Below are positions 43,435-62,090 of a stretch of 64,000 nt of DNA, piece after piece; positions within the stretch are counted from its first letter, which is position 1, and each line of letters begins with the position of its first letter. Position numbers and translations under genes: made by a program. A model generated the notes under the pieces. It did not search any database. It was not told the DNA's origin and saw only the letters and a list, made by a program, of their open reading frames with translations. The stretch is from positions 248,001 to 312,000 of the IMG/VR virus record IMGVR_UViG_3300032245_001860, one strand, 5' to 3'.

Positions 43435-44055
43435 ATGATTTCTTTATGTATTACTCATCGAGTTGACGAGGATATATCTTGGGTTGAAGATATTTATGGT
43501 GATTTATTAATTTATAATAAAGGAGACGAATGGGATCTTCCATATCCTTGTCATGAGTCTCCCAAGATACCTAATGAAGTTGATACTTTTTTAAGGGGCA
43601 TTATTGAAGCTTATGATATTATGCCAAATTATAGATTTGTTTACCTTCTAAGACCTAATTGCAGACACTTTGATGAAGATGTTACATCTTATATAAGCAT
43701 AAATCAATACAATCAAGTTAATGATAATGAGATAGTTCCACTTGCTGATAAATTTTTTGATTTCAATTTAGATCAAGCTAAAAAAACTCTTAATGAGAAT
43801 CAAATATTAGTATTAGATTCTGTATTAGATATTATGAGTAAGTTAGGGATTAATTTGAATGATAAGACCTATTCATGCTCATATGGTTCTCAGTATTTTT
43901 TTAGTAGCCAGTTTGTAATCAATAAACCCAAAGAATGGTGGATTGCTGTGCATAGTATAGCTAATCAAATATATGAAAGTTTTGGAAATGATGTTTCTTA
44001 TATATTTGAAATTTTGTGGCCAATGATTCTAAGACATTCTTTAATTCAAGAATAA
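43435..44055 (+). CDS. divergent DUF3431-like protein
   Basis: EDISWV..LIYNKG...SQYFFS...KPKEWW...FEILWP. Confidence 0.7.
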   Translation: MISLCITHRVDEDISWVEDIYGDLLIYNKGDEWDLPYPCHESPKIPNEVDTFLRGIIEAYDIMPNYRFVYLLRPNCRHFDEDVTSYISINQYNQVNDNEIVPLADKFFDFNLDQAKKTLNENQILVLDSVLDIMSKLGINLNDKTYSCSYGSQYFFSSQFVINKPKEWWIAVHSIANQIYESFGNDVSYIFEILWPMILRHSLIQE

Positions 44056-44066
44056 TGTGAGTAATT

Positions 44067-44771
44067 ATGAATAATATTTTTGTTCCAAATAATTATATAA
44101 AATTAAGTTCTATAAAAGTTTCTAAAGACATAGAAGAAGCTTACAAGGAAAATAAAGGTTTTGAAGTTAAGTTAGAATTTAATGATTTACCATATGGTGA
44201 AAATGCCTTGTCTAAATCAATAGATGAAGAAACTATGAATCTACACCATGACAAACATCATAAGAAATATTTTGATAATTTAATGGAAGCCCTGTCAGAT
44301 CAAAACATAGACAATTTGAATGTGAATGATGTATTGTCTAATCTTGAAAAATATCCCAAGTCAATAAGAGAAAAGATTAGAAATAATGGTGGTGGTCACT
44401 TTAACCATGAGTTTTTTTGGAATCTAATGTCTCCAACACCTAAAACAAAACCTGAAGGTAAATTACTTCAAATGATTGAGAATCAATTTCAATCATTTGA
44501 AAATTTTAAAGAAGAATTTATTCAAACTGGCTTAGATAGATTCGGATCAGGCTGGGTATGGCTTTGCGTAAACAATGGAAAATTAAAATTGTCATCTATG
44601 CCAAATCAAGATAATCCAATAATTGAGAAATGCGGAGTGCCTTTGGTTGGATGTGATGTTTGGGAACATGCATATTACTTAAAATATAAGAATGACAGAG
44701 AGGCATACTTAAAAGCCTGGTTTGATGTTTTAAACTGGGATTTTCCTGAAAAAATTATATCAAAATTGTAA
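44067..44771 (+). CDS. sodA: Mn/Fe superoxide dismutase with N-terminal extension
   Basis: LPY..AL, HHDKHH, NNGGGHFNH (Mn-type signature), FGSGWVWL, PNQD, DVWEHAYY. Confidence 0.95.
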   Translation: MNNIFVPNNYIKLSSIKVSKDIEEAYKENKGFEVKLEFNDLPYGENALSKSIDEETMNLHHDKHHKKYFDNLMEALSDQNIDNLNVNDVLSNLEKYPKSIREKIRNNGGGHFNHEFFWNLMSPTPKTKPEGKLLQMIENQFQSFENFKEEFIQTGLDRFGSGWVWLCVNNGKLKLSSMPNQDNPIIEKCGVPLVGCDVWEHAYYLKYKNDREAYLKAWFDVLNWDFPEKIISKL

Positions 44772-44789
44772 ATTTGTATAATTTTTTTT

Positions 44790-45452
44790 ATGAAAGACAG
44801 ATTGGTTGTAATTGCAAGATATAATGAAAATTTAGATTGGTTAAAAAATCTAAATAATCCTTTTATGGTCTACAATAAAGGCCAAGAATTTCCATATGAA
44901 ATAATTAGAAAAGACATTCCTAATAAGGGTAGAGAAGCAGAGACATATATTAGATCAATCATTGAAAATTATTCTGTGCTGAGTCAATATAAATATATGG
45001 TTTTCTTGCAAGGAAATCCATTTGATCATTGCCAGGATTTATACAACAAAATAAATTCATATGATAATGAAAATACTTTTGATTACTTATCTGAATTAAA
45101 TGGCGAAGTGCAATTTGATAAAATTTTATACTTAAGAGATCATTCTGTTTCTTTAATTGATTGTTTATTGAATCAAAGTTATGTAAATCAATCAGGTGCA
45201 GTAAAAACACTTTTATTGTTAAATCTAATCGGTATCAAATTACAATCTTGTCAATGGAGTTATGCATGTGGTGCTCAATATATAGTTCCAACCAAAATAA
45301 TTCTAAATAAATCTATAGAATGGTGGATGCATTTTTATAGAATTTTTCAATGCTATTCTACTTCAGCCCCTAATGACTTTGCTTACATATTGGAATTGAC
45401 TTGGCCGATTATATGGAATTTTTCTGACAATACAAAGGAAGAATCATATTAA
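44790..45452 (+). CDS. DUF3431 family protein
   Basis: VIARYNENLDW..YNKG..PNKGREAETY..FLQGNPFDH..GAQYIV..LELTWP. Confidence 0.8.
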   Translation: MKDRLVVIARYNENLDWLKNLNNPFMVYNKGQEFPYEIIRKDIPNKGREAETYIRSIIENYSVLSQYKYMVFLQGNPFDHCQDLYNKINSYDNENTFDYLSELNGEVQFDKILYLRDHSVSLIDCLLNQSYVNQSGAVKTLLLLNLIGIKLQSCQWSYACGAQYIVPTKIILNKSIEWWMHFYRIFQCYSTSAPNDFAYILELTWPIIWNFSDNTKEESY

Positions 45453-45495
45453 TGCAAATAATAAGTATATAAGAGATTTTCGGAGATCAAAAAAA

Positions 45496-45870
45496 ATGAA
45501 TTTTGTTACTAATTTACTTACAATGCATAATCAATTCAAAGTTTATCATTGGCAAACACAAAGAAAAGTCGGAAGTTTTGCTCAACATAATGCTTTTGGC
45601 ACAGCATATGATGATTTAACTGATCACATTGATGATTTTATTGAGATATATCAAGGTAAACGTGGTGCAATAATTGGTAAAAATGGCTTTACAATTAATC
45701 TACAAAATCTTGATGATAATCCTGTTGCTTTTGTTGATGAATTCATTAGCTATTTAACTCAACATGTAACAGAAGCGCTTGATCCTGTTGCTGACACTGA
45801 TTTATTAAATATTAGAGATGAAATGCTTGGTATTTTGAACCAGACAAAGTACCGTTTAAATATGAAGTAG
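45496..45870 (+). CDS. ferritin/Dps-like four-helix protein (DUF5856-like)
   Basis: KVYHWQT...HNAFGxxYDxLxxxIDxFIExYQG...LNIRDEM...KYRL. Confidence 0.8.
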   Translation: MNFVTNLLTMHNQFKVYHWQTQRKVGSFAQHNAFGTAYDDLTDHIDDFIEIYQGKRGAIIGKNGFTINLQNLDDNPVAFVDEFISYLTQHVTEALDPVADTDLLNIRDEMLGILNQTKYRLNMK

Positions 45871-46245
45871 ATGAATCAACTTAATGAAAAAATTGCCATC
45901 ATTTTTACTAAATGTTTTGGCAATATGTTTACATTCTGGGCATTTTGTGGCTGGGCATTTTTACCATTGATTCCAGTTTTATCTAATTACAAAGAAACAA
46001 TTTTATACATAAGCAGCGGGTTTATACAACTCGCTGCTCTTCCTTTAATAATGGTTGGTCAAGAAGTTTTAGGTCGTGATTCTGAAAAAAGATCTTTAAA
46101 AGACCATGAAATGATACAAACTCAATTTTATAGAATGGAAGATGCAATGGATAAATTAGGCTTGATATTAGAAGAAATAAGAGAATTGCATTTACATACA
46201 CATAAAATGCTCAAGAAAGATAATGATGTCCCAGAAGACTTATAA
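45871..46245 (+). CDS. membrane protein, DUF1003-like
   Basis: Two hydrophobic segments; SSGFIQLAALPLIMVGQ...KDHE followed by coiled coil. Confidence 0.65.
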   Translation: MNQLNEKIAIIFTKCFGNMFTFWAFCGWAFLPLIPVLSNYKETILYISSGFIQLAALPLIMVGQEVLGRDSEKRSLKDHEMIQTQFYRMEDAMDKLGLILEEIRELHLHTHKMLKKDNDVPEDL

Positions 46246-46468
46246 TAGTTATTATGATTCTGATGGTGTAAAAGCAATGGTCGCTAAAAAATTAGCAACT
46301 TTAGAACTTTCCAATGGTGAGATGAAAAAAAGCTTAGAGTTTTCTCTCAATCTTGATACAGAGCAATTAAAAAATATATATAAAAACCTGTCCAAAAATC
46401 AGCAAAAAACCAAATTTGGACAGGCTATAAAAATGATCATAGAAATCAAAGAAGAGTTTTATTTATAA
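46223..46468 (+). CDS. hypothetical protein
   Basis: 81-aa ORF filling the gap in a + strand run. Confidence 0.5.
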   Translation: MMSQKTYNSYYDSDGVKAMVAKKLATLELSNGEMKKSLEFSLNLDTEQLKNIYKNLSKNQQKTKFGQAIKMIIEIKEEFYL

Positions 46469-46839
46469 CCACAACCCCCGCAAGTGTCGTACTCTTCTCC
46501 TTCTATAGAGAAACTTTTGTTACATCCACAAGTTTTTGCAGCGTTTGGATTTTCTACCTTAAATCCAGATTGCATTCCATTTTCTTGATAATCTATAACA
46601 CATCCATTGACATATTTTGCTGAACTATATTCTACTGCAATTTTTATATCTTTATCATAAACTATAATGTCATCGATTTCAGGCTCACCTTCTGCTAAAG
46701 CAAGTCCATATTGTAATCCTGAACATCCTCCACCAGACACATAAAAAGCAAGATAAGCATCAGAAACAGATTGATCTTCTATAGTGTTCAAAATAATTTT
46801 AGCTGCAGTTTCAGTTAAAGAAATATTTAAATCATTCAT
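46459..46839 (-). CDS. HesB/IscA/ErpA A-type Fe-S cluster carrier
   Basis: ISLTETAA, GGCSGLQY, GFKVENPNA, TCGCNKSF; extra C-terminal CGGC. Confidence 0.92.
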   Translation of the reverse strand: MNDLNISLTETAAKIILNTIEDQSVSDAYLAFYVSGGGCSGLQYGLALAEGEPEIDDIIVYDKDIKIAVEYSSAKYVNGCVIDYQENGMQSGFKVENPNAAKTCGCNKSFSIEGEEYDTCGGCGYK

Positions 46840-46841
46840 AT

Positions 46842-47717
46842 TTACCTCAAAATTTCAAACCTTGTTGCATGTATTACTGGTCTCACTAAAACTAAATCAA
46901 GTGCTGTGTCAACTAAAACTTGAGCAGTAATATCAGTTTCAGGCTCTACAGAATCAGTATGCACTATTAAACCCTTTTTATGTTCTCCAACCACAATCTT
47001 TTGAGCAAAATATAACAGTGAAGCTTCTTTACTCTCAGCAATCTGAAATTTTTTCAACCAAGAGCTGACCCAATCTTGCTCAACAATGCTATTATTCTTT
47101 TTAACAACCCAGTTTTCTGGGTGTAATAATGCTAAATCATATCTTGTCGAAAGTGATTTTACATCTTCCATGTCATCAGCATTTGTAGCTTTTATGCAAA
47201 GTTCACCATCAAAGTTATCAATTAAAGTCTTTGTAACTTTTAATGGTTCTTCAATTTTAACATGGTAATCATGAAGCATTTCATTGAGTAATGTTTCAGC
47301 TTTGCCATAATTTTCATTTTGCAAAGCATCATCAAGCTCATAATGAATATCTAAAGTGGAAGCTAATTTCTTTAGATAATCTATAACTTCTTCTTCAGAA
47401 AGTAAAATTATATCTGTATCTTGAGTTCTTGCTAATTTTGGTTCTATAATTCTAAATTTGAATAAATCTTCAATGATAATTTTATAATAGCCCCAAGCTT
47501 GATGGTTGATATTTAGGAAACATTCATGTATGAGATTTCCATTTGACCCAAAAACATCTGTTGGTATAATTTGCATAAATGAATTTTGTTCTGGATCTAC
47601 TAAGCCAAGAGAAGTTGTTTCAGTTCCTAATCTCATAGCACATCGAACAATATCTTGATTATCTTCAACCCAAATGGCAATTCCTGCTTCTAAGGCATAT
47701 TCTGGTGTTTTTTCCAT
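46842..47717 (-). CDS. hypothetical protein (291 aa)
   Basis: Long acidic ORF; TATAAT 6 nt upstream of ATG. Confidence 0.7.
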   Translation of the reverse strand: MEKTPEYALEAGIAIWVEDNQDIVRCAMRLGTETTSLGLVDPEQNSFMQIIPTDVFGSNGNLIHECFLNINHQAWGYYKIIIEDLFKFRIIEPKLARTQDTDIILLSEEEVIDYLKKLASTLDIHYELDDALQNENYGKAETLLNEMLHDYHVKIEEPLKVTKTLIDNFDGELCIKATNADDMEDVKSLSTRYDLALLHPENWVVKKNNSIVEQDWVSSWLKKFQIAESKEASLLYFAQKIVVGEHKKGLIVHTDSVEPETDITAQVLVDTALDLVLVRPVIHATRFEILR

Positions 47718-47743
47718 AAAACTATTATACGTTAGAACTCATT

Positions 47744-48463
47744 TTAAATATCTTTGTGTTCAATGTGCAATTCTTCTATTTTTTTAAGAAATTTGTCTAT
47801 GGTTCTGATAGATGGGTTTTCAATGGTAATCTCATGTAGATTGGGTTTGTTAGCTTCTTTATTTAAAACTATAATACTATCGTAATAAACAATCGATTCT
47901 AAATTTTTAGTGAAATAAGTATGATCAATTTCTATAGAGTTTCGGGAATTTAATTGATCAATAATATTTTTAGTATGTTCAATGAAGCTTTTTGGATTTT
48001 TATAACCACCATCATCATAAAATTTAAAATAAGATGTATGGCAATCCTCTACAAGATATATTCCATTATCAGATAGTAAATGTTCAAAAGCAAAATTTAA
48101 AGTTTGGATTTGATGATTGTTTTTATGACTTCCATCATCAAGAATTACATCAAATTTGCCATATTTAGCAGCAATTTTTTCAAGAAAATCAATGTCTGAT
48201 TGATCTCCTATTTCAATTTTGATATTATTTTTTTCAAGATTTTTGCACTCAGGTTCAATATCTATTCCAAGAATTTGTGAGTTTTCTCCAAAGCAATAAG
48301 CCCACATATCTAAAGACCCGCCTTTCCAAACACCAATTTCAAGAAATTTGATATCTTTGTCTACAAATTTTCCAAAGTGTTTATTGTAGATATCTAAGTA
48401 ATGGGTCCACTTATGAATGCTTCTATGAGTTCTGTTGTAAAAAAAATCTTCAAACTTATTCAT
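47744..48463 (-). CDS. class I SAM-dependent methyltransferase, sugar O-methyltransferase-like
   Basis: HKWxHY, LEIGVWKGGS, GIDI, GDQSD, DVILDDGSH, YLVED; start moved to ATG 48463, which has TATAAT 7 nt upstream. Confidence 0.85.
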   Translation of the reverse strand: MNKFEDFFYNRTHRSIHKWTHYLDIYNKHFGKFVDKDIKFLEIGVWKGGSLDMWAYCFGENSQILGIDIEPECKNLEKNNIKIEIGDQSDIDFLEKIAAKYGKFDVILDDGSHKNNHQIQTLNFAFEHLLSDNGIYLVEDCHTSYFKFYDDGGYKNPKSFIEHTKNIIDQLNSRNSIEIDHTYFTKNLESIVYYDSIIVLNKEANKPNLHEITIENPSIRTIDKFLKKIEELHIEHKDI

Positions 48464-48484
48464 GAAAATAATTATACTGTTAAA

Positions 48485-48516
48485 TGAAAAGGGACAGGAT
48501 GAGATCAATCCTGTCC
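48485..48516 (-). terminator. intrinsic terminator
   Basis: Minus strand ggacaggat-tgatctc-atcctgtcc followed by cttttc. Confidence 0.75.
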
Positions 48517-48598
48517 AAGCAGTTTCGTTTACAGGATTACGATACTCGCAACTTATATCTTGCCTGTTGATCCACTTAAAAAAGTCAAACTGCACAAC
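48487..48598 (-). ncRNA. candidate small structured RNA or attenuator leader (~110 nt)
   Basis: TATAAT at 48605-48610, nested stems gcagttt/aaactgc and acagg/cctgt, ends in the terminator above. Confidence 0.4.
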
Positions 48599-48679
48599 CG
48601 CCTTATTATACTGGTGGCATTTCCAGTCTTATATTAGGTCTTTTACTGAAATTACATAATAAATCGTTAAAATAATAGG

Positions 48680-49247
48680 TAACAATTTATTTTTTTTACT
48701 TGTTGCAAAAGTGTATTTTCATAAGCCAGGTTGTTTATTCCTAATACGAGATATGTCTATTTCTTGGGTAGATAAAGCCGTCAAATCTTCATCTTAACAC
48801 GCCAGTTGCGCTTGCTTTCGTCATAAGCTATACCCGCTCTCTACAGAAGTGTGCATATCTTGTTGCTCCTGAATAAGGAATACAACTCACTTCAATGTCT
48901 ACTGCATCACGAAGCAAGTAGACCTGATTTCAAGATTCTATTAGTTTTGAAATTTATAGAAACTAATAAACCTTTAATCATGCTATACAGCCCTTGACCG
49001 TGACTTCTCGGACCATATAACTACCTTTATTTTCTTAGACTTTAATGCCGCTGATTGATACATATATTCAGCGTTTATATGTATGTTTTCATCTCCATCA
49101 TAGTTCCAGGTTTCGGGCCTGAAACTCACAGAAAACAGGCTTGCTTGAACGACCATTACTGGCGGGAGCAGTAGAGAATTGCTTTATCCCTTTTTTATAT
49201 CTCACGATGTCAAGCCACCGAAATTGTTATTCAATTGTTAAAATACA
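48680..49247 (-). ncRNA. candidate large structured non-coding RNA (~550 nt), family unassigned
   Basis: ORF-free, apparently richer in GC than neighbouring spacers, consensus promoter upstream, at least 10 helices including nested long-range pairs and two pseudoknots. Confidence 0.7.
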
Positions 49248-49253
49248 AATATT

Positions 49254-49281
49254 ATTATATTGTTATTGATATTTTTGTCAA
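49254..49281 (-). promoter_or_regulatory. sigma70-type promoter for the large RNA
   Basis: TTGACA (49281-49276), 16-nt spacer, TATAAT (49259-49254) on the minus strand. Confidence 0.75.
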
Positions 49282-49997
49282 TCACCTTTTGAAGGGTCAT
49301 ATTCAAAAATCAATGGCCATAAATTTTCAAATGTTCCTGACATTCTGATACCTGTCCCAATTGGATTATTAGCAATCACAATCAATTTATATAAACATGC
49401 CCACCATTCGTAAGGCTTATTTATAATCTTTGAAACTGGTACAATATGTTGAGCTCCAGAACCCCATTGATACGATCTTCCTTTATATGGGATATCCATC
49501 ATTTTGCAAACAAAAGAAACTAAAGCGAGATCAGTTGCTACAATTTCAGATTCTTCAATATGATCGTCATAAATTAATGGGCATGTTATTTTTTCTTCTG
49601 GGCAAAATATTTTTCTGATTAAAATATTATAAAAACCATTTATGTAAAAATCATCATCATTTGCAAATTCAAAAGGATTACAATGTGTGGTTAGAGGCAT
49701 ATAAGTGTCTTTATTAGCATTATTTATTATATCAATTGTATTTGCACAATGGTCAAATGGGTGTCCTTGTAAAAAAATTACAGTTTCTAATAAATGCAAT
49801 TGATCATAATTTTCTAAAATACCACGAAGAAATGCTTCTGCTTCTCGCCCAATATTAGGAGAATCTATTTTATGAATTTCAGGCCAAAGCCAGTCCTCTC
49901 CATGATTATATATAATATAATATGTCTTGAGATTTTTTATCCATTGAATGTCTTCATCATATCTGCATACTATAGTTAGCTTTTTGTAGTCTTGCAT
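49278..49997 (-). CDS. DUF3431 family protein
   Basis: IVCRYDEDIQW..PNIGREAEAF..FLQGHPFDH..GAQHIV..FENLWP; ATG 49997 preferred over TTG 50015. Confidence 0.8.
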   Translation of the reverse strand: MQDYKKLTIVCRYDEDIQWIKNLKTYYIIYNHGEDWLWPEIHKIDSPNIGREAEAFLRGILENYDQLHLLETVIFLQGHPFDHCANTIDIINNANKDTYMPLTTHCNPFEFANDDDFYINGFYNILIRKIFCPEEKITCPLIYDDHIEESEIVATDLALVSFVCKMMDIPYKGRSYQWGSGAQHIVPVSKIINKPYEWWACLYKLIVIANNPIGTGIRMSGTFENLWPLIFEYDPSKGD

Positions 49998-50505: not shown

Positions 50506-51138
50506 ATGCCGATAACACTTTCAGATGCTCTCATATTTACTCTTGCTTGGGAAGGAGGATTTACTAATCACCCTCTTGACCCTGGTGGAGCTACAAATTT
50601 TGGTATCATTCAAACAAGATATGATGAATATCGCAAATTCAAAAAACTGAAAACCCAAACAGTAAAGCTTATTACCAAAGAAGAATACACAGAAATTTAT
50701 GATAAATATTATTGGGATCCAGTAAGAGCTCAATATTTGTTGGGACCTTTAGGGCTTGCATTATTTGATACAGCAGTAAATTTGGGTGTAGGTGGAGCTC
50801 TAAGCAGATTGCAGTCTTCCATGAAATTGCCTGTCACTGGTAAATGGACCCAAAACATAAGTGACAAAATACATGATGCTAATCAATTGGATATAGCAAT
50901 CAATATTTGTAAGCTAAGAATAGCAAAAAGATATGCAAGGGTCAAACAAAGACCAGATCAAGTTGTCTTCTTAAAAGGATGGCTCAATAGAGATAATGCT
51001 TTATTGAGAAAAGTCAAATCTTTAGGTGGAATTTCTGTTTTGTCTATTGAGCCAGGTTACGATTTTGATTTAGAAGAGATTACTAATGAGTTTAATACAG
51101 ATCTTCTGAAGGAACTGGAAGCTTTTGATTTGGATTAG
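50506..51138 (+). CDS. glycoside hydrolase family 108 endolysin
   Basis: EGGFTNHPLDPGGATNFGI, IYDKYYW, FDTAVNLG, FLKGWLNR; GGAGG upstream. Confidence 0.92.
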   Translation: MPITLSDALIFTLAWEGGFTNHPLDPGGATNFGIIQTRYDEYRKFKKLKTQTVKLITKEEYTEIYDKYYWDPVRAQYLLGPLGLALFDTAVNLGVGGALSRLQSSMKLPVTGKWTQNISDKIHDANQLDIAINICKLRIAKRYARVKQRPDQVVFLKGWLNRDNALLRKVKSLGGISVLSIEPGYDFDLEEITNEFNTDLLKELEAFDLD

Positions 51139-51826
51139 GTTGGTGATTCCAAATAGATAGCCACACTCTTTCGCAATATGCAGCTATTTCATCACCTGGA
51201 TTTATAGACTTCCAATCTTTAATCAATGTGTAAAATTCAGTCCACCATTCAAAATTTTTAGATTTGATATATGATGTGGGCACTATATATTGCGCTCCAG
51301 CAGAATAGGTAATTTCCTTAGAAGATAAATCTAATCCTAACATTTGGGCAAAAAATACAGAAGTGCTAATTTCTAAACCTCTGTCATCATTTAAGTCTAT
51401 GTCTCCAGACAATTTTGTAAATGTTGCTGAAGGGGCAAATTGCTTTCTGAAAAGTTTACATATTGTTGCAGCTTCAAAATTAAAGTACGCTCTGTCACTT
51501 GGAAGTTTGTAAGTGACCATTGAATTTGCTAAAAATACAATTTCATTTGAATTGTATTCGTTTATGGATTCGACTGGGTCATCATCATGGTCAAAAGGAT
51601 TCCCTTGAATGAAAATAACACAATCATAATCATCCAGCATTTCATAGCATTCGACAATAGCTCTTGCGTAAGTTTCACACTCTCTGCCATAATTTTCAAT
51701 ATCAACTCTTGGAATATCTTCCCAAGGCCAATTTTCGCCTTTATTATAGATTAATATATCTCCATCTAATTCTTTAGACCATTCAATGTCCTCATTGTAT
51801 CTTGCTATAATTGTTAATTTTTTCAT
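51092..51826 (-). CDS. DUF3431 family protein
   Basis: IIARYNEDIEW..YNKG..ENYGRE..FIQGNPFDH..GAQYIV..ERVW; start 51826 in an ATGA overlap. Confidence 0.8.
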   Translation of the reverse strand: MKKLTIIARYNEDIEWSKELDGDILIYNKGENWPWEDIPRVDIENYGRECETYARAIVECYEMLDDYDCVIFIQGNPFDHDDDPVESINEYNSNEIVFLANSMVTYKLPSDRAYFNFEAATICKLFRKQFAPSATFTKLSGDIDLNDDRGLEISTSVFFAQMLGLDLSSKEITYSAGAQYIVPTSYIKSKNFEWWTEFYTLIKDWKSINPGDEIAAYCERVWLSIWNHQPNPNQKLPVPSEDLY

Positions 51827-52536
51827 AAGTCTGAGTGTTGCCAAATTAATGGCCAAATCCTTTCTAAAATATATGTCCAAGCAATTTCATTCTTTTCTTT
51901 GCACAAATAATAAAATAAGTAATGAAGATTTTTCCACCATTCTAATGATTTGTTGGTAATTAAAAACGAGGGAACTGTGTATTGTGCCCCAACAGCCCAA
52001 TAATTATCTTTATCTTGATGATCTAATCCCAAGATTGTACACATTGTCACATTGTCTAAAAACCAATTTTTATTTGGTTCTTGATTTGTCACAGTGTTAG
52101 TATTCAAATCTAATTTTTGATATTTAGGAATAAATTCTTCATTCAAGTGATCTAAGTTCAGCATGCAATTTATTATGGAAGGATGAATATTGAATATTCT
52201 TCTATTGTCATTGTAAATATCTCTATTAATTGAATTAGACAAAGCAAGTATTTCATTTTTTTCATTATTGTTGATCATTTGAATAATATCTGGGCAATGA
52301 TCAAAAGGATTTCCTTGCACAAAAGATATCAAATCATAATCTTTGAAAACTTCATAAAATTCAATAACGGCTCTGACAAAAGTTTCACCTTCTCTGCCAT
52401 AATTTTCAATGTTTATTCTGGGAATATTTTCATAAGGCCAATCATCACCTTTATTATAAATAACAATATCTCCAGACAATTCTTTAGACCATTCAATGTT
52501 TTCATTGAATCTTGCAATAATTGTTAGCTTTTTCAT
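51823..52536 (-). CDS. DUF3431 family protein
   Basis: Same motifs; start 52536 in an ATGA overlap. Confidence 0.8.
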   Translation of the reverse strand: MKKLTIIARFNENIEWSKELSGDIVIYNKGDDWPYENIPRINIENYGREGETFVRAVIEFYEVFKDYDLISFVQGNPFDHCPDIIQMINNNEKNEILALSNSINRDIYNDNRRIFNIHPSIINCMLNLDHLNEEFIPKYQKLDLNTNTVTNQEPNKNWFLDNVTMCTILGLDHQDKDNYWAVGAQYTVPSFLITNKSLEWWKNLHYLFYYLCKEKNEIAWTYILERIWPLIWQHSDL

Positions 52537-53246
52537 AAGTCTTTGTGATCCAAAATTAGAGGCCAAATACGTTCTAATGCATATGTCCAAGATTCAATTT
52601 GTTTATATTTGGAAATATATTCGAAAATCATATGCAAATTTTCCCACCATTGTTTACTTTTATACTTAATATTTTTTATTGGTACTATATATTGACCACC
52701 ATTAGCCCATTCAACAATCTTATTTTGATAATCTATATCTAATATAGAGCACAATCCCATGGTTTCTTCAAATAAAAAGAAATCTGTGTTTGATTGATTT
52801 CTACTTAATTCATTTGGATTGCAGTAATCAATCTTTGATTTGAATGACTTATCTTCAATTTGAAGTAAAATATTTATGATTGAAAAATGTTTACCATTGA
52901 TGAAGTCATCTGACGGGTATTGGTCTTTAGAAACAAAATCAGATATTTTTACAATAGAGTTCTTGAATGAAAAATTTATAACTTTTTTGAAATCTTTGCA
53001 ATGCTCTTGTGGATTACCTTGCAAAAAAACTACATTGTCATAATGGTCTAAATTTTCATAAAATTCTATGATAGCCCTGACAAAAGTTTCACCTTCTCGG
53101 CCATAGTTTTCAGTATCTATTCTTGGTATATCTTTCCATGGCCAATCTGTGCCTTTATTATAGATGACAATATCTCCATCTAAATCTCTTGCCCATTTAA
53201 TATCTTCATTATATCTGGCAACTATAATCAAGTTTTTGGGACTCAT
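52533..53246 (-). CDS. DUF3431 family protein
   Basis: Same motifs; TAAAAT 6 nt upstream of ATG. Confidence 0.8.
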   Translation of the reverse strand: MSPKNLIIVARYNEDIKWARDLDGDIVIYNKGTDWPWKDIPRIDTENYGREGETFVRAIIEFYENLDHYDNVVFLQGNPQEHCKDFKKVINFSFKNSIVKISDFVSKDQYPSDDFINGKHFSIINILLQIEDKSFKSKIDYCNPNELSRNQSNTDFFLFEETMGLCSILDIDYQNKIVEWANGGQYIVPIKNIKYKSKQWWENLHMIFEYISKYKQIESWTYALERIWPLILDHKDL

Positions 53247-53264
53247 GAAATTATTTTACAAGAA

Positions 53265-53291
53265 AGGTGACTGTCAATTTATCTGTAAATA
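53265..53291 (+). promoter_or_regulatory. candidate phage promoter AGGT-N16-GTAA
   Basis: Same spaced motif recurs at 55756, 56114 and 60535, each intergenic and upstream of a + strand gene. Confidence 0.45.
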
Positions 53292-55755: not shown

Positions 55756-55783
55756 AGGTACTAAAATCATAATTATGTAAAAT
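55756..55783 (+). promoter_or_regulatory. candidate phage promoter AGGT-N17-GTAA
   Basis: AGGT 55756-55759, GTAAAAT from 55777. Confidence 0.4.
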
Positions 55784-55800
55784 TATTTTTGAGGTAAATT

Positions 55801-56109
55801 ATGAACTTAGATACATTTAATTTCAACGACACAATAGAGTCAGAAACCAGACCCGTACTTGTTAAATTTTGGGCATCTTGGTGTGGTCCCTGCAAAGCTT
55901 ATGCCCCAACCTTTGAAAAATTTGCAGAAGAAAATCCTGATGTTGCTTGTTTCTCTGTAGATTGTGAAGAAAGTAAAGATTTAGTAGAAGAGTTTCACAT
56001 TATGTCTATACCTGTAACTTTACTTTTTAAAAATGGTGAAAATGTAACTCAAAAACAAGGCAAATTGACAGCAAATGATCTAAGCCAATTAGTAGCTGAG
56101 CACAAATAA
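55801..56109 (+). CDS. trxA: thioredoxin
   Basis: FWASWCGPCK active site, SIPVT cis-Pro loop, FKNG. Confidence 0.92.
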   Translation: MNLDTFNFNDTIESETRPVLVKFWASWCGPCKAYAPTFEKFAEENPDVACFSVDCEESKDLVEEFHIMSIPVTLLFKNGENVTQKQGKLTANDLSQLVAEHK

Positions 56110-56113
56110 TAAT

Positions 56114-56141
56114 AGGTTTTATAACCCTATATTTGTAATAT
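56114..56141 (+). promoter_or_regulatory. candidate phage promoter AGGT-N17-GTAA
   Basis: AGGT 56114-56117, GTAATAT from 56135. Confidence 0.45.
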
Positions 56142-56169
56142 ATTTAGTATTACTCCCAAGGATTGTCAA

Positions 56170-57702: not shown

Positions 57703-58001
57703 TGGCATTTCAAAAAGATCAAGAGTTAGACAGTGGATTTACTGGAAACTATTGGAGATTGTCTGCTGTAAATGTTTACTGTGAAGGCGATCCAGCAGTT
57801 TCTATCAGTATGTTTTTATATAAAGATAGAAATGCCAGATTGCAAGGAAAATCATCAATATCAGATATGTTGATTCAAATTCCACTATCATCTATTGATT
57901 CGACATTCTCATATGATTTTAGAGCTTGTATCTATAACAGATTGAAACAATTGGAATATTGGCAAGATGCAATAGATGTTATTGAAGAAGATGGTTCATA
58001 A
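57702..58001 (+). CDS. small probable virion/tail-associated protein
   Basis: SGxxGNYWR...ARLxGKSS...FSYDFRACxYN; paralog of next ORF. Confidence 0.7.
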   Translation: MAFQKDQELDSGFTGNYWRLSAVNVYCEGDPAVSISMFLYKDRNARLQGKSSISDMLIQIPLSSIDSTFSYDFRACIYNRLKQLEYWQDAIDVIEEDGS

Positions 58002-58013
58002 GGAAATAAAAAA

Positions 58014-58583
58014 ATGGCTTTTGAATTAAATAGAGATTTACCCTCAGGTGTATCAGGAAATTATTGGAAGATTAGCTCTGCATTAGTTGCTTGTAGTACA
58101 GATTATCCAACTTGTGATGTTTATTTAGAATTGTTTTTGACAAGACAAGCAAGATTAGATGGGAAATCATCATTGCTGACACAAGTTGTAGGAGTTCCAT
58201 TAGCAATAGTAGATATGTCATTCTCATATGATTTCAGAGCTTGTTTATATAATACTATAAAGTCATTTCCTGAATGGACATCCGCTGTAGATATATTTGA
58301 TGACCCTAATCACGTTCCTGTTGCTAATAATGTAAATTTGGTCACCGATTTTGAAACTGCTAAAAATATTACTTTTTCAGCATATGACAATTTCAATGCT
58401 CCTATTACAATCAGCGTTGTAGATCAGCCAACTAATGGAGTAATCACAGAAAGCAATGGAGTATTTACTTACACTCCTAATGCTGGTTACTCAGGTTCTG
58501 ATCTTGCTACATACAAGGCATCAAATAGTCAATTTGATAGTACTCCGGCAAATATTAATATCACAGTAAATCCAGGTGCATAA
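58014..58583 (+). CDS. paralog of the previous ORF fused to an Ig-like (Big_9/cadherin-like) domain
   Basis: C-terminal PVANN...QPTNG...FTYTPNAGYSGSD..TYKAS...ANINITV. Confidence 0.8.
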   Translation: MAFELNRDLPSGVSGNYWKISSALVACSTDYPTCDVYLELFLTRQARLDGKSSLLTQVVGVPLAIVDMSFSYDFRACLYNTIKSFPEWTSAVDIFDDPNHVPVANNVNLVTDFETAKNITFSAYDNFNAPITISVVDQPTNGVITESNGVFTYTPNAGYSGSDLATYKASNSQFDSTPANINITVNPGA

Positions 58584-58584
58584 T

Positions 58585-59121
58585 ATGGAAAAAGAATCAA
58601 AGTGGACACAAAAATATAAAGATTCTATCGATTGCAGCAAACCACAAAAAGGCTTCAGTCAAAGAGCCCATTGCCAAGGAAAAAAGAAAAAGAAAAAATC
58701 TAAGGCATCTGTTTTGGAAACCTTGAATAAGATAGCAATTCAGCTTGAAAATTCTGGTAAGTTTTCATTAGCATCAGAAGTCAATGACGTTTTTATTAAG
58801 GTAGCAAATAAATTCAAACCAGAATATAAAGTTCCTTTTCCTATGAATCTTGATGACGCTTTAAACAATTATGATTCAAGCAATTATGAAGTTGATGTTG
58901 AAGGCGATTGGGAAGAAACTGAGCCTATTTCAGATTTTAGAGAAGAAGCTTCGGATGATTTACTTCATTCACCAGCAGCAGTCGATGATAATCACTTAAT
59001 TTTCTATAACGAAGATGAAGATCATGTTGAAGTAATGAATATGGTTCCTAAACATCATTTAGATAGTTTACATAAAAATCCAAGCAAACAAACTAAATTC
59101 ATAAAAAGAGCCGAAGACTAA
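58585..59121 (+). CDS. protein with basic Cys/His module, internal leader motif and acidic tail
   Basis: KWTQKYKDSIDCSKP.KGFSQRAHC module, then LNKIAIQLENSGKFSLASEVNDVFIKVA; ATG 58585. Confidence 0.75.
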   Translation: MEKESKWTQKYKDSIDCSKPQKGFSQRAHCQGKKKKKKSKASVLETLNKIAIQLENSGKFSLASEVNDVFIKVANKFKPEYKVPFPMNLDDALNNYDSSNYEVDVEGDWEETEPISDFREEASDDLLHSPAAVDDNHLIFYNEDEDHVEVMNMVPKHHLDSLHKNPSKQTKFIKRAED

Positions 59122-59122
59122 A

Positions 59123-59143
59123 AAGGGGAGCAATGCTCCCCTT
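59123..59143. terminator. intrinsic terminator between convergent genes
   Basis: aaggggagc-aat-gctcccctt. Confidence 0.8.
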
Positions 59144-59144
59144 G

Positions 59145-59993
59145 TTATTTATTTCTAATCAATAGTTCAGTTGCTGGTTTTGCTTCATAACCATCATCTG
59201 TCTTCTTTCTTCTTCCTGCTGTGTAAGTAACAGGGAATTTATCCACTAAAAGACCAGTATTATCAAAGAAACCATCTTCTATATCTCTGTTGCATAAAAA
59301 CACGTCAGATTGCTTATTTGACCTTACAAAATTCAGTAGTTTATTTTGATCATCATCTGAAAACTCTTGACCGTAAGAAGTAAACGATCCTCTGTATGGT
59401 GGATCTAAAAATATAAAATGTTCAGGCTCATCTACAGCATAACTTACTGCATCAGACCAATCACCAGAAAGCACTGATGCAGTTTGCAATTTGTCATGCC
59501 ACCATTCAACTACTTCTTTTTCATACACTTTATCTTTTTGATTTAGTAAACCAGATGGCGTTCCGTATCTATTGTTTGTATTGATATTAAGTTGATAGAT
59601 ACCATTAAAACCTGTTTTCATTAAAAAATAAAGTACAGCTGCTTCTTTGACAGTATCCCAAGCTGCATAATCATAAGCATGTTGATGTCTTAAAGAATAA
59701 TAGTAATCTTTTCTACCAGCTTTATCTAATGGTAAATATTCTTTTGACATTTCATCCATAAAATTAATGAAATCTTCGTGATTATCTCTGATCGTTTTGT
59801 ATATACGAACAATATCACTGTTGACATCATTGATGATAAGATGCTTTGGATTATAATGTTCAACTACATGAATGAACATTGCTCCACCGCCAAAAAATGG
59901 TTCTATATAAGTTTTGACCGATTTTGGCATGAATGGCTTATAATGCTTAAGCATTTTATTCTTACCGCCAGCCCAAATAAATAAAGGTTTCAT
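59145..59993 (-). CDS. Dam-family (D12 class) N6-adenine DNA methyltransferase
   Basis: KPLFIWAGGK, YIEPFFGGGA, IINDVN, FLDPPY. Confidence 0.93.
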   Translation of the reverse strand: MKPLFIWAGGKNKMLKHYKPFMPKSVKTYIEPFFGGGAMFIHVVEHYNPKHLIINDVNSDIVRIYKTIRDNHEDFINFMDEMSKEYLPLDKAGRKDYYYSLRHQHAYDYAAWDTVKEAAVLYFLMKTGFNGIYQLNINTNNRYGTPSGLLNQKDKVYEKEVVEWWHDKLQTASVLSGDWSDAVSYAVDEPEHFIFLDPPYRGSFTSYGQEFSDDDQNKLLNFVRSNKQSDVFLCNRDIEDGFFDNTGLLVDKFPVTYTAGRRKKTDDGYEAKPATELLIRNK

Positions 59994-60517
59994 TAATTTT
60001 CCTTACCCAAATACGCCATCATTATACTTTCAATTTCTTGTTCTGTAAATCCATTCTCATTCAGAAAAAATACACAGCTTAATGGATCTAACTTTTTCAT
60101 TGTCTCTGAAAACTTATGTAATATTTTTCCTTCACAACATCCACTTCCAGATAAAAATGTAATATATTTTACTTGTGGATTTAACATTTTGCAAAGTATA
60201 TAGTTTTTGCCCCATCTTTCTATTGCATTCCCATCTTGGCCTTGATGCTTGCTTTCAAATACATAACAAAGATTTCTCTGCTTGCCTCTTGGTTGATCAA
60301 ACCAAAATCCGCCATCAGGTACACAACCTAAACTAACATCAAGATTGACAAATTCTGGAAGTTTTCTTTTGCCATTTTTATCGTTGTAATGTTCTTTTTC
60401 AAAATAATATTTGCTGCGTAGAGATGATGCAATTTTGTTCATTGCTTTTTTAGTGTTATCATCTAAGCTTTTTGATTCACGGGTAGTTGCGATATCACCC
60501 CTGCCACCTTTACTCAT
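59993..60517 (-). CDS. compact EcoRI-like PD-(D/E)xK restriction endonuclease
   Basis: VPDGG...FESKHQG..GNAIERWGKN parallels EcoRI PDGG...EAKHQG...GNAIERSHKN; TAATG-coupled to the methylase. Confidence 0.75.
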   Translation of the reverse strand: MSKGGRGDIATTRESKSLDDNTKKAMNKIASSLRSKYYFEKEHYNDKNGKRKLPEFVNLDVSLGCVPDGGFWFDQPRGKQRNLCYVFESKHQGQDGNAIERWGKNYILCKMLNPQVKYITFLSGSGCCEGKILHKFSETMKKLDPLSCVFFLNENGFTEQEIESIMMAYLGKEN

Positions 60518-60534
60518 AAAAAATACCTCAAAGT

Positions 60535-60562
60535 AGGTGAAAAATATACACCCCTGTAAAAG
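60535..60562 (+). promoter_or_regulatory. candidate phage promoter AGGT-N17-GTAA
   Basis: AGGT 60535-60538, GTAAAAG from 60556. Confidence 0.45.
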
Positions 60563-60595
60563 TATATCATAAGTTTAAATATAAAGGCAATACTT

Positions 60596-61399
60596 ATGGA
60601 TAAATGGCGAATAATTGAAGCTAAAAATCATGGTGGATTGGATGATTGGTTTAACAAAGAAAAATGGGTAGATGTCTCTCGTCCTAAAAAGAAAGGCAAA
60701 GGATATGAGCCTTGTGGACGTGGCGATACTTCAAAAGGAAAAAAACCAGTTTGCACTCCTGCTAATAAAGCTAAGAATCTTACCGAAAAAGAACGCAAAA
60801 ACAGAATTCGCCAAAAAAGAAAAAAAGAAAAAGAACCAAATCCGGACAAGAAGCCAAATAATACAACATATTCTCCTGGCGCTGGTGGAAAATCAAATGT
60901 TTCTGAAACCAACAATATAAGATTTGTTGGAAGTATAATTCCATTATCGGAATTACGTCCAAAACAACCTAAATTTGTTAAAATTGCAATCTTAGGCGAA
61001 GAAGATGAAATCCCATCTACTGAAATATCTGGAATGTTTTCAGAACAAGATGATAAAATATCAGCTATGGCAGAACAAATTCAAGAAGAAGCATTTACAA
61101 AACTTGCTGAAATACTATCTCATCAAATGGGTTTAAGTGGTCCTGACGCTCCTTCAATAAGCTCTATAAAGTATTATGAAAATCCAGTTCAAGAAGAAAT
61201 GACTGAACAAGAATACCTTAGATTTATACGTCATAAAAGTGCTGTAATTCGTAGCATGCATAAACAAGCTAAAGAAAATTCAGATTCTAAAATGTATGAA
61301 ATTACATACAAAATGGCAGTCAATGGTTCTAATCCTTTTAATTATTCGGATATTGTAAAAGTAGTTAGGGAAGTTTTAGAAAATTCAAATTCCAATTAA
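60596..61399 (+). CDS. protein with basic DUF5872-like module and acidic C-terminal domain
   Basis: GGLDDWF.KEKWVD...CGR...PVCTP...RQKRKKE; domains separated by KFVKIA. Confidence 0.7.
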   Translation: MDKWRIIEAKNHGGLDDWFNKEKWVDVSRPKKKGKGYEPCGRGDTSKGKKPVCTPANKAKNLTEKERKNRIRQKRKKEKEPNPDKKPNNTTYSPGAGGKSNVSETNNIRFVGSIIPLSELRPKQPKFVKIAILGEEDEIPSTEISGMFSEQDDKISAMAEQIQEEAFTKLAEILSHQMGLSGPDAPSISSIKYYENPVQEEMTEQEYLRFIRHKSAVIRSMHKQAKENSDSKMYEITYKMAVNGSNPFNYSDIVKVVREVLENSNSN

Positions 61400-61418
61400 A
61401 ACGAATAAAAAGGATTAC

Positions 61419-62090
61419 ATGGAAACTATTTTTATTATTAAGAATTTTAAAAGAACAAAAGATTGTGTCTTGACTATTAAGAGTATTAGGCATTTTTGTG
61501 ATAATGAAATACATATTCTACATTTATTTAATGAAAGTATTGACGAATACAAAACATCAGAACTTTCATATAATGAAGAATTAATGAGTATGGGTGTAAT
61601 CCAATTTTTTGGTAAAACAAAGTATAATTGTGGTCCAGGTTGTTTAAGTCCAGTGAATGGTTTGTATTATTCTGAGGGATTGAATTATTGTTCTGAAATT
61701 TTTAAGGGTCAAAACAAAAAAGTAATATTTTTAGATGAAAATCATTTTTTCACTACAGGTGAAACAATTAAATTTTTATTAGATAATGATTATGATTTTG
61801 CTTATGGAACTTGGGGCGATCCTACACTTAGTGGTGAAGATGAAAATACGTTGCCTAATTGCTCATTATTAGGTTTTAATTTTTTTAATTTAAAACATTT
61901 ATTTCCTATCCAAGAAGTCATAATGTTTTGTGAACCTCTAATCAGTCAAGAAATTCTTGCTAAAATCACAGACAAATCTCGTATTTATAAAATACCAACC
62001 AGAATAAGAGACAATTATTGTGGAGATGGTTTTTGGACTAATGATTATGATCAAATGTATGATGCTTTGCAAAAAAGTGGAATCGTATAA
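61419..62090 (+). CDS. putative GT-A fold glycosyltransferase
   Basis: N-terminal IFIIKNFKR...TIKSIR strand-helix and VIFLDEN in the DxD-like position. Confidence 0.5.
   Translation: METIFIIKNFKRTKDCVLTIKSIRHFCDNEIHILHLFNESIDEYKTSELSYNEELMSMGVIQFFGKTKYNCGPGCLSPVNGLYYSEGLNYCSEIFKGQNKKVIFLDENHFFTTGETIKFLLDNDYDFAYGTWGDPTLSGEDENTLPNCSLLGFNFFNLKHLFPIQEVIMFCEPLISQEILAKITDKSRIYKIPTRIRDNYCGDGFWTNDYDQMYDALQKSGIV

What the first reader, a model, noticed from the sequence alone, without database searches (positions are those of the whole stretch)
43435..62090. Six DUF3431 paralogs plus a sugar O-methyltransferase-like and a GT-like gene: candidate glycan-decoration pathway
Seen: DUF3431-type genes at 43435, 44790, 49278, 51092, 51823 and 52533 (the last three in tandem with ATGA overlaps), with conserved RYNE, GRE, QGxPxxH, GAQY and ExxW and a variable middle. 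A methyltransferase lies at 47744 and a GT-A-like ORF at 61419. Inference: DUF3431 proteins act as glycosyl- or related transferases, and the extremely Ser/Thr-rich fibres or the host surface are the substrates. A glycosylated bacteriophage fibre coat, comparable to giant-virus fibrils, would be unusual.
Basis: inference. Interest (0 to 1): 0.6.

Follow-up and report, generated by a model that had tools for sequence, protein, structure and literature searches.

The report
Phage glycosyltransferase-like DUF3431 gene family
A 316-kb freshwater jumbo phage carries six copies of an uncharacterised gene family (DUF3431) that folds like a sugar-transferring enzyme and is repeatedly fused or adjacent, in many viruses, to the enzyme that makes UDP-galactofuranose, so it is probably a new glycosyltransferase family in a phage-encoded sugar-decoration pathway whose target is still unknown.

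Summary
Exactly six DUF3431 paralogs lie at the stated coordinates, with the stated motifs, a variable middle and two ATGA overlaps. A Methyltransf_24-type methyltransferase and a second GT-A-fold ORF (61419-62090) are also there.

The AlphaFold model of paralog D (pLDDT 90.6) matches only GT-A / nucleotide-diphospho-sugar transferase folds, with VIA Z up to 9.7. There is no DxD motif; an invariant QGNPFDH loop sits in its place. Five paralogs keep all family-invariant residues. Paralog A and its orthologue in a related phage are degenerate.

The strongest functional evidence is from context:
- 25 of 80 viral DUF3431 loci have UDP-galactopyranose mutase (GLF) within 10 kb, usually abutting.
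- Two natural GLF-DUF3431 fusion proteins exist.
- Other fusions join DUF3431 to GT2, GT90, GT92, GT32, GT10, GT14, HtrL, TylF/Methyltransf_24 and epimerase domains.
- The phage encodes GLF, a sugar epimerase/dehydratase, a nucleotidyltransferase, sugar C- and O-methyltransferases and four more GT-type genes.

So the "glycan pathway" reading is supported. The acceptor (fibres, host surface or DNA) is not shown.

In passing I found a roughly 760-nt conserved, structured, promoter-to-terminator non-coding RNA candidate at 48485-49247 that matches no Rfam family.

The parts
43435..44055 (+). DUF3431 paralog A (206 aa). It is degenerate: it lacks G47, R48, Q74, G75, P77 and D79-H80. It has a similarly degenerate orthologue in relative L092 (59% identity).
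44790..45452 (+). DUF3431 paralog B (220 aa) with all invariant residues. Its orthologue is L093:14383-15027.
47744..48463 (-). SAM-dependent methyltransferase (239 aa from ATG 48463) of the Methyltransf_24 / O-methyltransferase-like type. It is absent at this place in relatives L092 and L093. Homologues abut DUF3431 in L028, L031 and L065.
49278..49997 (-). DUF3431 paralog C (239 aa). Invariant residues are kept, with K29H and N76H.
51092..51826 (-). DUF3431 paralog D (244 aa). This is the modelled copy: GT-A fold, pLDDT 90.6.
51823..52536 (-). DUF3431 paralog E (237 aa). Its start overlaps the stop of F in an ATGA.
52533..53246 (-). DUF3431 paralog F (237 aa), the first gene of the F-E-D tandem. 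It is orthologous to L092:3817-4530 and L093:8053-8778.
53250..53277 (-). Sigma-70-like promoter match (TTGACA-16-AATAAT, 11 of 12) directly upstream of F. It is the candidate promoter of the F-E-D unit. This is a consensus match only.
61419..62090 (+). Second, unrelated GT-A-fold ORF (223 aa) with an invariant L-D-E motif after the fourth strand. No linkage to DUF3431 is shown.

Best explanation
The six genes are a lineage-specific, old expansion of the DUF3431 family in an uncultured tailed jumbo phage. DUF3431 is a soluble enzyme with a GT-A (nucleotide-diphospho-sugar transferase) fold.

I propose that five paralogs (B-F) are active glycosyltransferases. They would bind an NDP-sugar at the C-terminal edges of strands 1-4, through the R-Y-N-E, Y-N-K-G, G-R-E and Q-G-N-P-F-D-H loops, with D-H and conserved Arg/Lys residues replacing the usual DxD-metal site. 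They would transfer the sugar to an acceptor held by the variable middle region, so that each paralog makes a different linkage or serves a different acceptor.

They would work in the infected cell's cytoplasm, together with the phage's own sugar-nucleotide enzymes (GLF, epimerase/dehydratase, nucleotidyltransferase), other GTs and methyltransferases, including the adjacent Methyltransf_24 enzyme that would methylate the sugar.

Shown: paralogy, conservation, predicted fold, genomic and fusion context.
Inferred: transferase activity (about 0.7); UDP-galactofuranose as donor for at least some paralogs (about 0.4); virion fibre proteins as acceptor (about 0.3).
For: Fold:
- The model of D has pLDDT 90.6 and pTM 0.88.
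- All 50 best VIA matches are GT-A or nucleotidyltransferase chains. The best are mannosylglycerate synthase (Z 9.7, rmsd 4.2, 166 residues), ArnC (9.5) and hyaluronan synthases (9.3); GlfT2 scores 7.9 and AfGfsA 7.7.
- Foldseek PDB hits are weak (best 1.3e-3) but uniformly the same fold.
- BFVD hits are viral GT-A proteins, down to E 2.4e-10.
- The family-invariant residues sit after strands 1, 2, 3 and 4.

Context:
- GLF lies within 10 kb in 25 of 80 viral DUF3431 loci. It is the largest neighbour cluster among 937 neighbour ORFs.
- 12 of 14 searchable whole records hold GLF.
- The adjacency is scattered over at least 13 places on the family tree.
- IMG/VR holds at least 586 GLF loci and 409 DUF3431 loci among 2.9 million contigs.
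- GLF-DUF3431 fusion proteins exist: P0145 and P0188, with both domains full length.
- Other fusions join DUF3431 to GT90, GT2, GT92, Caps_synth/GT32, GT10, GT14, HtrL, Methyltransf_24/TylF and epimerase.
- The window's methyltransferase has homologues abutting DUF3431 in other viruses.

Own genome:
- It encodes GLF (E 2e-63), an epimerase/dehydratase, WavE, sugar C-methyltransferase, FkbM methyltransferase, two GT2 genes, GT92, a HAD-nucleotidyltransferase and a GHMP kinase.
- The paralogs have no transmembrane segment.
- The phage has no WbaP, WecA, Wzx or Wzy.
- No ThyA-family enzyme was found.
Against: - No activity data exist for any DUF3431 protein. The literature holds only fungal expression notes.
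- The GT-A hallmark DxD is absent.
- Fold scores (Z 8-10) do not separate glycosyltransferases from sugar nucleotidyltransferases.
- No solved relative is detectable by sequence.
- In this phage GLF lies about 170 kb from the paralogs.
- A related 261-kb phage record with GLF shows no DUF3431 in the 73% that is held.
- Only 7 of 95 viral GLF loci carry DUF3431.
- In Desulfovibrio and Pseudodesulfovibrio chromosomes DUF3431 abuts LarC/LarB/LarE genes, not glycan genes.
- Copy number varies (three in relatives L092 and L093) and the methyltransferase is absent there, so the set is accessory, not a fixed pathway.
- The acceptor is unknown.
Confidence: 0.62

Rival explanations
1. DUF3431 is a real glycosyltransferase, but its acceptor is the host cell envelope (LPS, capsule, S-layer or wall polymer precursors). 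It would remodel the surface during infection, for example to block superinfection or to release progeny.
For: Phage GTs that change host serotype are established (summarised in PMC12619734). The genome has WavE and GT families typical of LPS clusters. Bacterial chromosomes also carry DUF3431, some copies fused to GT90. The genes lie in an accessory region that varies in copy number, beside the endolysin gene.
Against: No phage-encoded initiating polyprenyl-phosphate transferase, flippase, polymerase or ligase was found. The paralogs are soluble, without membrane segments. The many NCLDV homologues have no bacterial envelope to modify.
Confidence: 0.2
2. The enzymes glycosylate phage DNA, putting sugar on a hydroxylated or hydroxymethylated pyrimidine, with UDP-Galf from GLF as one donor. 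This has been proposed for Rhizobium phage RL38J1.
For: A published pathway links a phage-encoded UDP-galactopyranose mutase to glycosylated 5-hydroxycytosine DNA (PMC13326640). Phage GTs often act on DNA (PMC12619734). The paralogs are soluble and cytoplasmic.
Against: Those pathways need a thymidylate-synthase-family enzyme to make the acceptor base, and none is found in the 316-kb record at E<=1. The nearby DNA methyltransferase is a Dam-type N6-adenine enzyme, not a C5 enzyme. Most DUF3431 homologues are in NCLDV and eukaryotes and are fused to protein- or polysaccharide-type GT families. The record is only 88% complete, so absence is not proof.
Confidence: 0.08
3. DUF3431 is not a glycosyltransferase but a nucleotide-handling enzyme of the same fold. 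It could be a sugar-1-phosphate nucleotidylyltransferase that feeds GLF and the fused GTs with UDP-galactose, or another nucleotidyl- or phospho-transferase.
For: Nucleotidyltransferases (GlmU Z 8.8, IspD 8.6, CMP-KDO synthetase as best Foldseek hit) tie with GTs in the fold searches. DxD is absent and conserved Arg/Lys residues are present. A GLF fusion would also make sense for a UDP-Gal supplier. Adjacency to the CTP-using LarC in Desulfovibrionaceae fits too.
Against: The loop after strand 1 reads A-R-Y-N-E, which resembles the GT2 N-terminal motif rather than the G-x-G-x-R signature of nucleotidyltransferases. Six paralogs with a variable acceptor-side region, and fusions to seven different GT families, fit a transferase module better than a precursor enzyme. 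The genome already has nucleotidyltransferases.
Confidence: 0.1

Closest known systems
Pfam DUF3431 (PF11913), described from eukaryotes, mainly fungi (e.g. Aspergillus nidulans ANIA_08443 next to the glucan synthase gene celA)
   Same: Same family by HMM and by shared invariant motifs. No function is assigned in the literature.
   Different: The fungal proteins are longer and have one N-terminal membrane span with the domain outside the cytosol. The phage copies are 206-244 aa, soluble, and present as six paralogs forming a clade of their own (SH-aLRT 99). No homologue was found by tblastn in 50,697 GenBank phage records.
Galactofuranosyltransferases GlfT2 (mycobacteria, GT2) and GfsA (Aspergillus, GT31)
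   Same: GT-A fold (GlfT2 Z 7.9, GfsA Z 7.7). Both partner functionally with UDP-galactopyranose mutase, which is the commonest neighbour and a fusion partner of DUF3431.
   Different: No sequence similarity is detectable. Those enzymes have acidic DxD-type metal sites (own knowledge), while DUF3431 has NPFDH. They are not the top fold matches.
Chlorovirus PBCV-1 capsid glycosylation machinery (A064R and partners) and Mimivirus fibril glycosylation (own knowledge of the literature)
   Same: Virus-encoded, cytoplasmic, soluble GT-A enzymes combined with sugar methyltransferase domains and virus-encoded sugar-nucleotide synthesis. Multi-domain GT-GT-MT architectures resemble the DUF3431 fusions.
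   Different: These are eukaryotic viruses. The GT families are different and have DxD. There the acceptor (capsid or fibril proteins) is proven; here it is not.
Virion glycosylation in mycobacteriophages (Freeman et al. 2023, as summarised in PMC12619734)
   Same: A tailed phage that encodes GTs and decorates its own structural proteins.
   Different: Those GTs are ordinary families placed in the structural operon, and their targets are capsid and tail-tube C-termini. Here the genes lie in an accessory region after the fibre module and no target is known.
Glycosylated 5-hydroxycytosine DNA of phages RB69, DLP3 and RL38J1 (PMC13326640)
   Same: A phage-encoded GLF together with several GTs.
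   Different: That pathway requires a ThyA-family 5-hydroxy-dCMP synthase, and none was found here. The GTs named there are not DUF3431.

Membership tests
Pfam DUF3431 (PF11913) | Match to the family HMM above the gathering score (25 bits) | tested here: met
   B scores 38.6, D 32.6 and C 28.2 bits. F (20.0) and A (18.5) fall below the cut-off and E has no Pfam hit. All six match an HMM of 90 family members and each other. D's database twin carries a precomputed PF11913 hit.
Pfam DUF3431 (PF11913) | Family-invariant residues (R9, E12, W16, Y27-N28-K29-G30, N45, G47-R48-E49, Q74-G75-N76-P77-F78-D79-H80, G177-A178-Q179, E219) | tested here: met
   Kept in B-F with conservative changes. Not kept in A or in its orthologue L092:10904-11521.
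GT-A fold glycosyltransferases | Single Rossmann-like alpha/beta/alpha domain of the nucleotide-diphospho-sugar transferase type | tested here: met
   All 50 top VIA matches and nearly all top Foldseek matches have this fold (Z up to 9.7). The model's pLDDT is 90.6.
GT-A fold glycosyltransferases | DxD (or DxH) metal- and diphosphate-binding motif after strand 4 | tested here: not met
   The loop after strand 4 (residues 69-74) is Q-G-N-P-F-D-H, with a single acidic residue followed by His. Metal-independent GT-A enzymes do exist (4ayj is among the hits), so this lowers but does not exclude the claim.
GT-A fold glycosyltransferases | Transfer of a sugar from an NDP-sugar to an acceptor | not testable with these tools
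   Needs enzyme assays.
Galactofuranosyltransferases (functional class) | UDP-Galf supply: UDP-galactopyranose mutase in the same genome or locus | tested here: met
   GLF lies at G000 122962-124083 (E 2e-63). In the family at large, 25 of 80 loci are adjacent to GLF and there are two fusions. In this phage the genes are about 170 kb apart.
Galactofuranosyltransferases (functional class) | Homology to a characterised Galf-transferase family | tested here: not met
   No PDB sequence relative. Only fold-level similarity to GlfT2 and GfsA, no better than to other GT-A enzymes.
Sugar nucleotidyltransferases | G-x-G-x-R phosphate-binding loop after strand 1 | tested here: not met
   The sequence after strand 1 is A-R-Y-N-E-D.
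Methyltransf_24 / class I SAM methyltransferases (gene 47744-48463) | HMM match above the cut-off and a glycine-rich SAM loop | tested here: met
   PF13578 scores 27.6 against 26.3, PF01596 scores 22.7 against 22, and phrog_21658 gives 5.9e-19. An E-I-G-V-W-K-G-G-S loop is seen in the translation. That the substrate is a sugar is inferred from context only.
Phage DNA glycosylation systems | ThyA-family enzyme that makes hydroxymethyl- or hydroxy-pyrimidine nucleotides | tested here: not met
   No PF00303 match at E<=1 in the 316-kb record, while the control genomes do match. The record is 88% complete.
Wzx/Wzy- or ABC-type surface polysaccharide systems | Initiating polyprenyl-phosphate transferase, flippase, polymerase or ligase | tested here: not met
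   No PF02397, PF00953, PF01943 or PF04932 match in the genome. Use of host enzymes is not excluded.

The most novel reading that the evidence does not exclude
DUF3431 is a previously unrecognised glycosyltransferase family: GT-A fold, no DxD, possibly metal-independent. It is shared by fungi, giant viruses, a few bacteria and jumbo phages, and its ancestral job is to transfer galactofuranose from UDP-Galf. In this phage five diversified paralogs, plus an O-methyltransferase, build a methylated, Galf-containing glycan on the giant Ser/Thr/Gly-rich tail-fibre proteins.
Probability: 0.15. Interest if true: 0.8.

Novelty: new variant of a known kind. Interest (0 to 1): 0.6.

Why it matters
It would give a function to a widespread domain of unknown function: at least 409 loci in IMG/VR, many fungi, and some bacteria.

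It would also add a candidate galactofuranosyltransferase family. Galf is absent from mammals and its enzymes are drug and diagnostic targets in fungi and mycobacteria (own knowledge).

Finally, it would show that jumbo phages, like giant eukaryotic viruses, can carry a large autonomous glycosylation toolkit.

The GLF adjacency and fusions make the hypothesis directly testable with a defined donor.

Tried and rejected
- Megablast of the region against GenBank phages gave no match.
- tblastn of paralog D against 50,697 phage records gave no match.
- PHROGs has no family for DUF3431 or for ORF 61419.
- A profile search of PDB sequences gave only chance hits at E>1.
- hhalign of the DUF3431 profile against the ORF-61419 profile showed no relation, probability 0.3%. 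The two GT-A genes are therefore not paralogs.
- The fold search 'atlas' library was unavailable.
I replaced it with a degenerate DNA pattern for F-x-Q-G-N-P-F-D-H, which found 12 loci.
- A search for DUF3431 in 15 records of GLF-bearing relatives found nothing. Most of those records are 5-31% fragments, so the result says little.
- An exact 36-mer of the RNA element was not found in IMG/VR.
- The Freeman et al. paper is not held, so I cite it only through PMC12619734.
- No RNA runs hold the region, so read laying was not used and expression is untested.
- The large representative protein search was not used. The word search and family scans had already placed the protein.

Full report
**What the window is.** The window is bases 248001-312000 of a 315,852-bp IMG/VR virus record. 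CheckV puts it at 88% complete, with 33% G+C and about 94% coding sequence. It is a tailed phage, not a giant eukaryotic virus, for these reasons:
- A 705-aa protein next to GLF is a large terminase whose relatives are phage terminases. The best is an uncultured 485-kb phage.
- The region holds a GH108/phrog_315 endolysin, an HNH nuclease, a Dam methylase and a sigma-70-family factor.

Partial copies of the region occur in freshwater and aquatic metagenomes. No RNA run holds it.

**Observation.** No seventh exists in the genome.
- They are 28-49% identical to one another.
- F, E and D form a tandem with two ATGA overlaps and a good promoter match before F.
- None has a hydrophobic segment, so they are soluble cytoplasmic proteins.
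- Five (B-F) keep every family-invariant residue.
- A, and its orthologue in a related phage, have lost the G-R-E and Q-G-x-P-x-D-H residues. A is probably inactive or has changed chemistry, yet it is retained.

On a tree of 83 family members, the six copies plus the copies from two related metagenomic phages (L092, L093) form one clade (SH-aLRT 99). That clade contains orthologue pairs (A, B, F). The expansion is therefore old within this phage lineage, and copy number differs between relatives: three there, six here.

**Fold.** With a 90-sequence alignment, AlphaFold2 gives a confident model of D (pLDDT 90.6, pTM 0.88).
- An exhaustive structural scan of about 48,000 PDB representatives returns only GT-A glycosyltransferases and the structurally allied sugar nucleotidyltransferases among the top 50. 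The best are Z 9.7 (rmsd 4.2 A, 166 residues, mannosylglycerate synthase), ArnC 9.5, hyaluronan synthases 9.3, TarP 8.9, SpsA 8.4, GlfT2 7.9 and GfsA 7.7.
- Foldseek agrees but weakly (best E 1.3e-3).
- In the viral library the best hits are GT-A-type proteins of phages and giant viruses (E 2.4e-10).
- These Z values are only moderately above the background the tool quotes. The support comes from the uniformity of the list and the full-domain coverage, not from the score.
- The invariant residues fall in the loops after strands 1-4, where this fold binds the nucleotide-sugar (inference).
- The classical DxD is missing. Its place is taken by Q-G-N-P-F-D-H.
- No solved structure is related by sequence.

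**Context, the main functional evidence.**
- IMG/VR holds at least 409 DUF3431 loci. Many are in giant-virus bins (NCLDV capsid and VLTF3 neighbours) and some are in terminase-bearing phages.
- In the 80 best loci, the commonest neighbouring gene family by far is UDP-galactopyranose mutase (GLF). It is present in 25 loci, mostly overlapping or within tens of bases on the same strand.
- 12 of the 14 whole records that could be searched contain GLF, always within 5 kb of DUF3431.
- The adjacency is spread over at least 13 separate positions of the tree, so it is not one lineage's synteny.
- GLF itself is rare in viruses.
- Conversely, 7 of 95 GLF loci carry DUF3431, so DUF3431 is one of several partners of viral GLF.
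- Two natural proteins fuse a complete GLF to a complete DUF3431 domain: P0145 (601 aa) and P0188 (587 aa).
- Other fusions join DUF3431 to GT90 (six, plus one in a Haloferula genome), GT2 (six), GT92 (four), Caps_synth/GT32, GT10, GT14, HtrL, Methyltransf_24 with TylF, myo-inositol oxygenase and an NDP-sugar epimerase fragment.
- The window's methyltransferase has homologues directly abutting DUF3431 in other viruses, for example methyltransferase-methyltransferase-DUF3431-x-GLF in L028.

Together this places DUF3431 among glycan-building catalytic modules and points to UDP-galactofuranose as a frequent donor.

**The phage's own sugar toolkit.** Besides GLF (G000 122962-124083) the genome has two clusters.
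- Near 50-55 kb: kinase, HAD phosphatase, NDP-sugar epimerase/dehydratase, WavE, sugar C-methyltransferase and FkbM methyltransferase.
- At 140-147 kb: NTP_transf_3, Methyltransf_24, RuBisCO-like protein, HAD-nucleotidyltransferase, GT92 and GHMP kinase.

There are also two GT2 genes near 69 kb. ORF 61419-62090 is a further GT-A-fold protein (pLDDT 78; VIA Z 13.6; Foldseek 2e-7; invariant L-D-E after strand 4). It is unrelated in sequence to DUF3431.

**Acceptor.** This is the weak point.

For virion proteins:
- The paralogs follow a 38-kb module of giant proteins that are the five most Ser/Thr-rich in the genome (25-30% against 15%).
- One of these has a C-terminal tail-fibre assembly domain.
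- The module also holds a run of ConA-like lectin-domain paralogs.
- The enzymes are cytoplasmic, and the phage has no lipid-carrier initiation, flippase, polymerase or ligase genes.

For DNA:
- A published phage pathway uses GLF for glycosylated 5-hydroxycytosine.
- However, its obligatory ThyA-family enzyme is absent here, and the local DNA methylase is Dam-type.

For the host envelope:
- There is general precedent, and LPS-type GT families are present.

None of the three is excluded.

**An unexplained counter-observation.** In Desulfovibrio and Pseudodesulfovibrio chromosomes the DUF3431 gene overlaps the end of a LarC-like gene in a LarB/LarE cluster. That is nucleotide-cofactor chemistry rather than glycan chemistry, and it keeps a non-GT, nucleotide-handling role alive.

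**Comparison and novelty.** Virus-encoded glycosylation is known in chloroviruses and mimiviruses (own knowledge), and in mycobacteriophages (via PMC12619734).

What is new here:
- the assignment of DUF3431 to the GT-A fold with a non-DxD site;
- its statistical and physical (fusion) link to GLF;
- its expansion to six copies in a jumbo phage, although tblastn finds no homologue of paralog D in 50,697 deposited phage genomes.

The four papers that mention DUF3431 give no function. I therefore rate it a new variant of a known kind, of moderate to good interest.

**Side finding.** The 0.8-kb "gap" between the methyltransferase and paralog C is the best-conserved stretch of the neighbourhood. It is 90-96% identical to relatives, where flanking genes are 65-84% identical at the nucleotide level.
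- It starts after the only perfect 12/12 sigma-70 promoter match of the region.
- It ends in a GC-rich hairpin plus T-run.
- It has no ORF of 80 aa or more.
- It matches no Rfam 15 family, even at E<=1.
- It folds into a consensus structure with 220 pairs, of which 35-36 show compensatory double changes, against 4-7 when partners are slid.
- The alignment energy is -173 against -108 +/- 6 kcal/mol for column-shuffled controls, z about -10.8.

It is a candidate new large structured RNA of this phage lineage. The caveats are that there are seven sequences but only about three effective lineages, and that the structure was derived from the same alignment.

Noticed in passing
window 48485-49247, minus strand (promoter match 49254-49281, terminator hairpin 48492-48516): A non-coding element of about 760 nt with a perfect TTGACA-16-TATAAT promoter match and an intrinsic terminator. 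It is 75-96% identical in seven metagenomic copies (L092, L093, L134-L139), which is more conserved than the flanking genes. It has no Rfam 15 match. RNAalifold gives 220 pairs, 35-36 of them compensatory, with z about -10.8 against column shuffles. Candidate new large structured phage RNA.
   Followed up: partly
window 47744-48595: The 283-aa GTG-start reading of the methyltransferase is an artefact. Its first 44 codons lie in the conserved RNA element and terminator, which relatives have without any methyltransferase. The true start is ATG 48463. In L092 and L093 a 152-aa ORF occupies this slot, so the methyltransferase is a lineage-specific insertion.
   Followed up: yes
window 44067-46839 and 55801-56109: Redox and iron genes are interleaved with the DUF3431 genes: an Fe/Mn superoxide dismutase (E 2e-37), a ferritin-like DUF5856, an IscA-type Fe-S assembly protein and, judging from the relatives, a thioredoxin. 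The arrangement is syntenic in L092 and L093.
   Followed up: no
G000 140385-146816 (outside the window): A cluster of NTP_transf_3-like, Methyltransf_24, a RuBisCO large-chain-like protein (E 6e-33), a HAD-nucleotidyltransferase fusion, GT92 and GHMP kinase. A RuBisCO-like protein inside a phage sugar-nucleotide cluster is unusual.
   Followed up: no
G000 48217-49116 (outside the window): A type IV pilin-like protein with an N-terminal methylation motif and DUF1559. This is a family typical of Planctomycetota and Verrucomicrobiota (own knowledge), so it may hint at the host. Several bacterial DUF3431 carriers are also PVC bacteria, but the phage's 33% G+C does not match those genomes.
   Followed up: no
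window 18416-25250: A run of nine tandem ORFs inside the fibre module, eight of about 210-240 aa and one of 442 aa. The two that I scanned carry ConA-like lectin (Laminin_G_3) domains. They look like a diversified set of carbohydrate-binding tips.
   Followed up: partly
L095:2995-3666 and L101:508-1284 (Desulfovibrio and Pseudodesulfovibrio genomes): Bacterial DUF3431 genes overlap the 3' end of a LarC-like nickel-insertion gene, beside LarB- and LarE-like genes. This context is unrelated to glycans and remains unexplained.
   Followed up: partly
L096:2689-7121 (Saccharibacteria MAG contig, 33% G+C): Two tandem DUF3431 genes run directly into GLF, and a third DUF3431 copy lies 1.3 kb further on. 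This is another multi-copy DUF3431-GLF locus outside the virus collection.
   Followed up: partly
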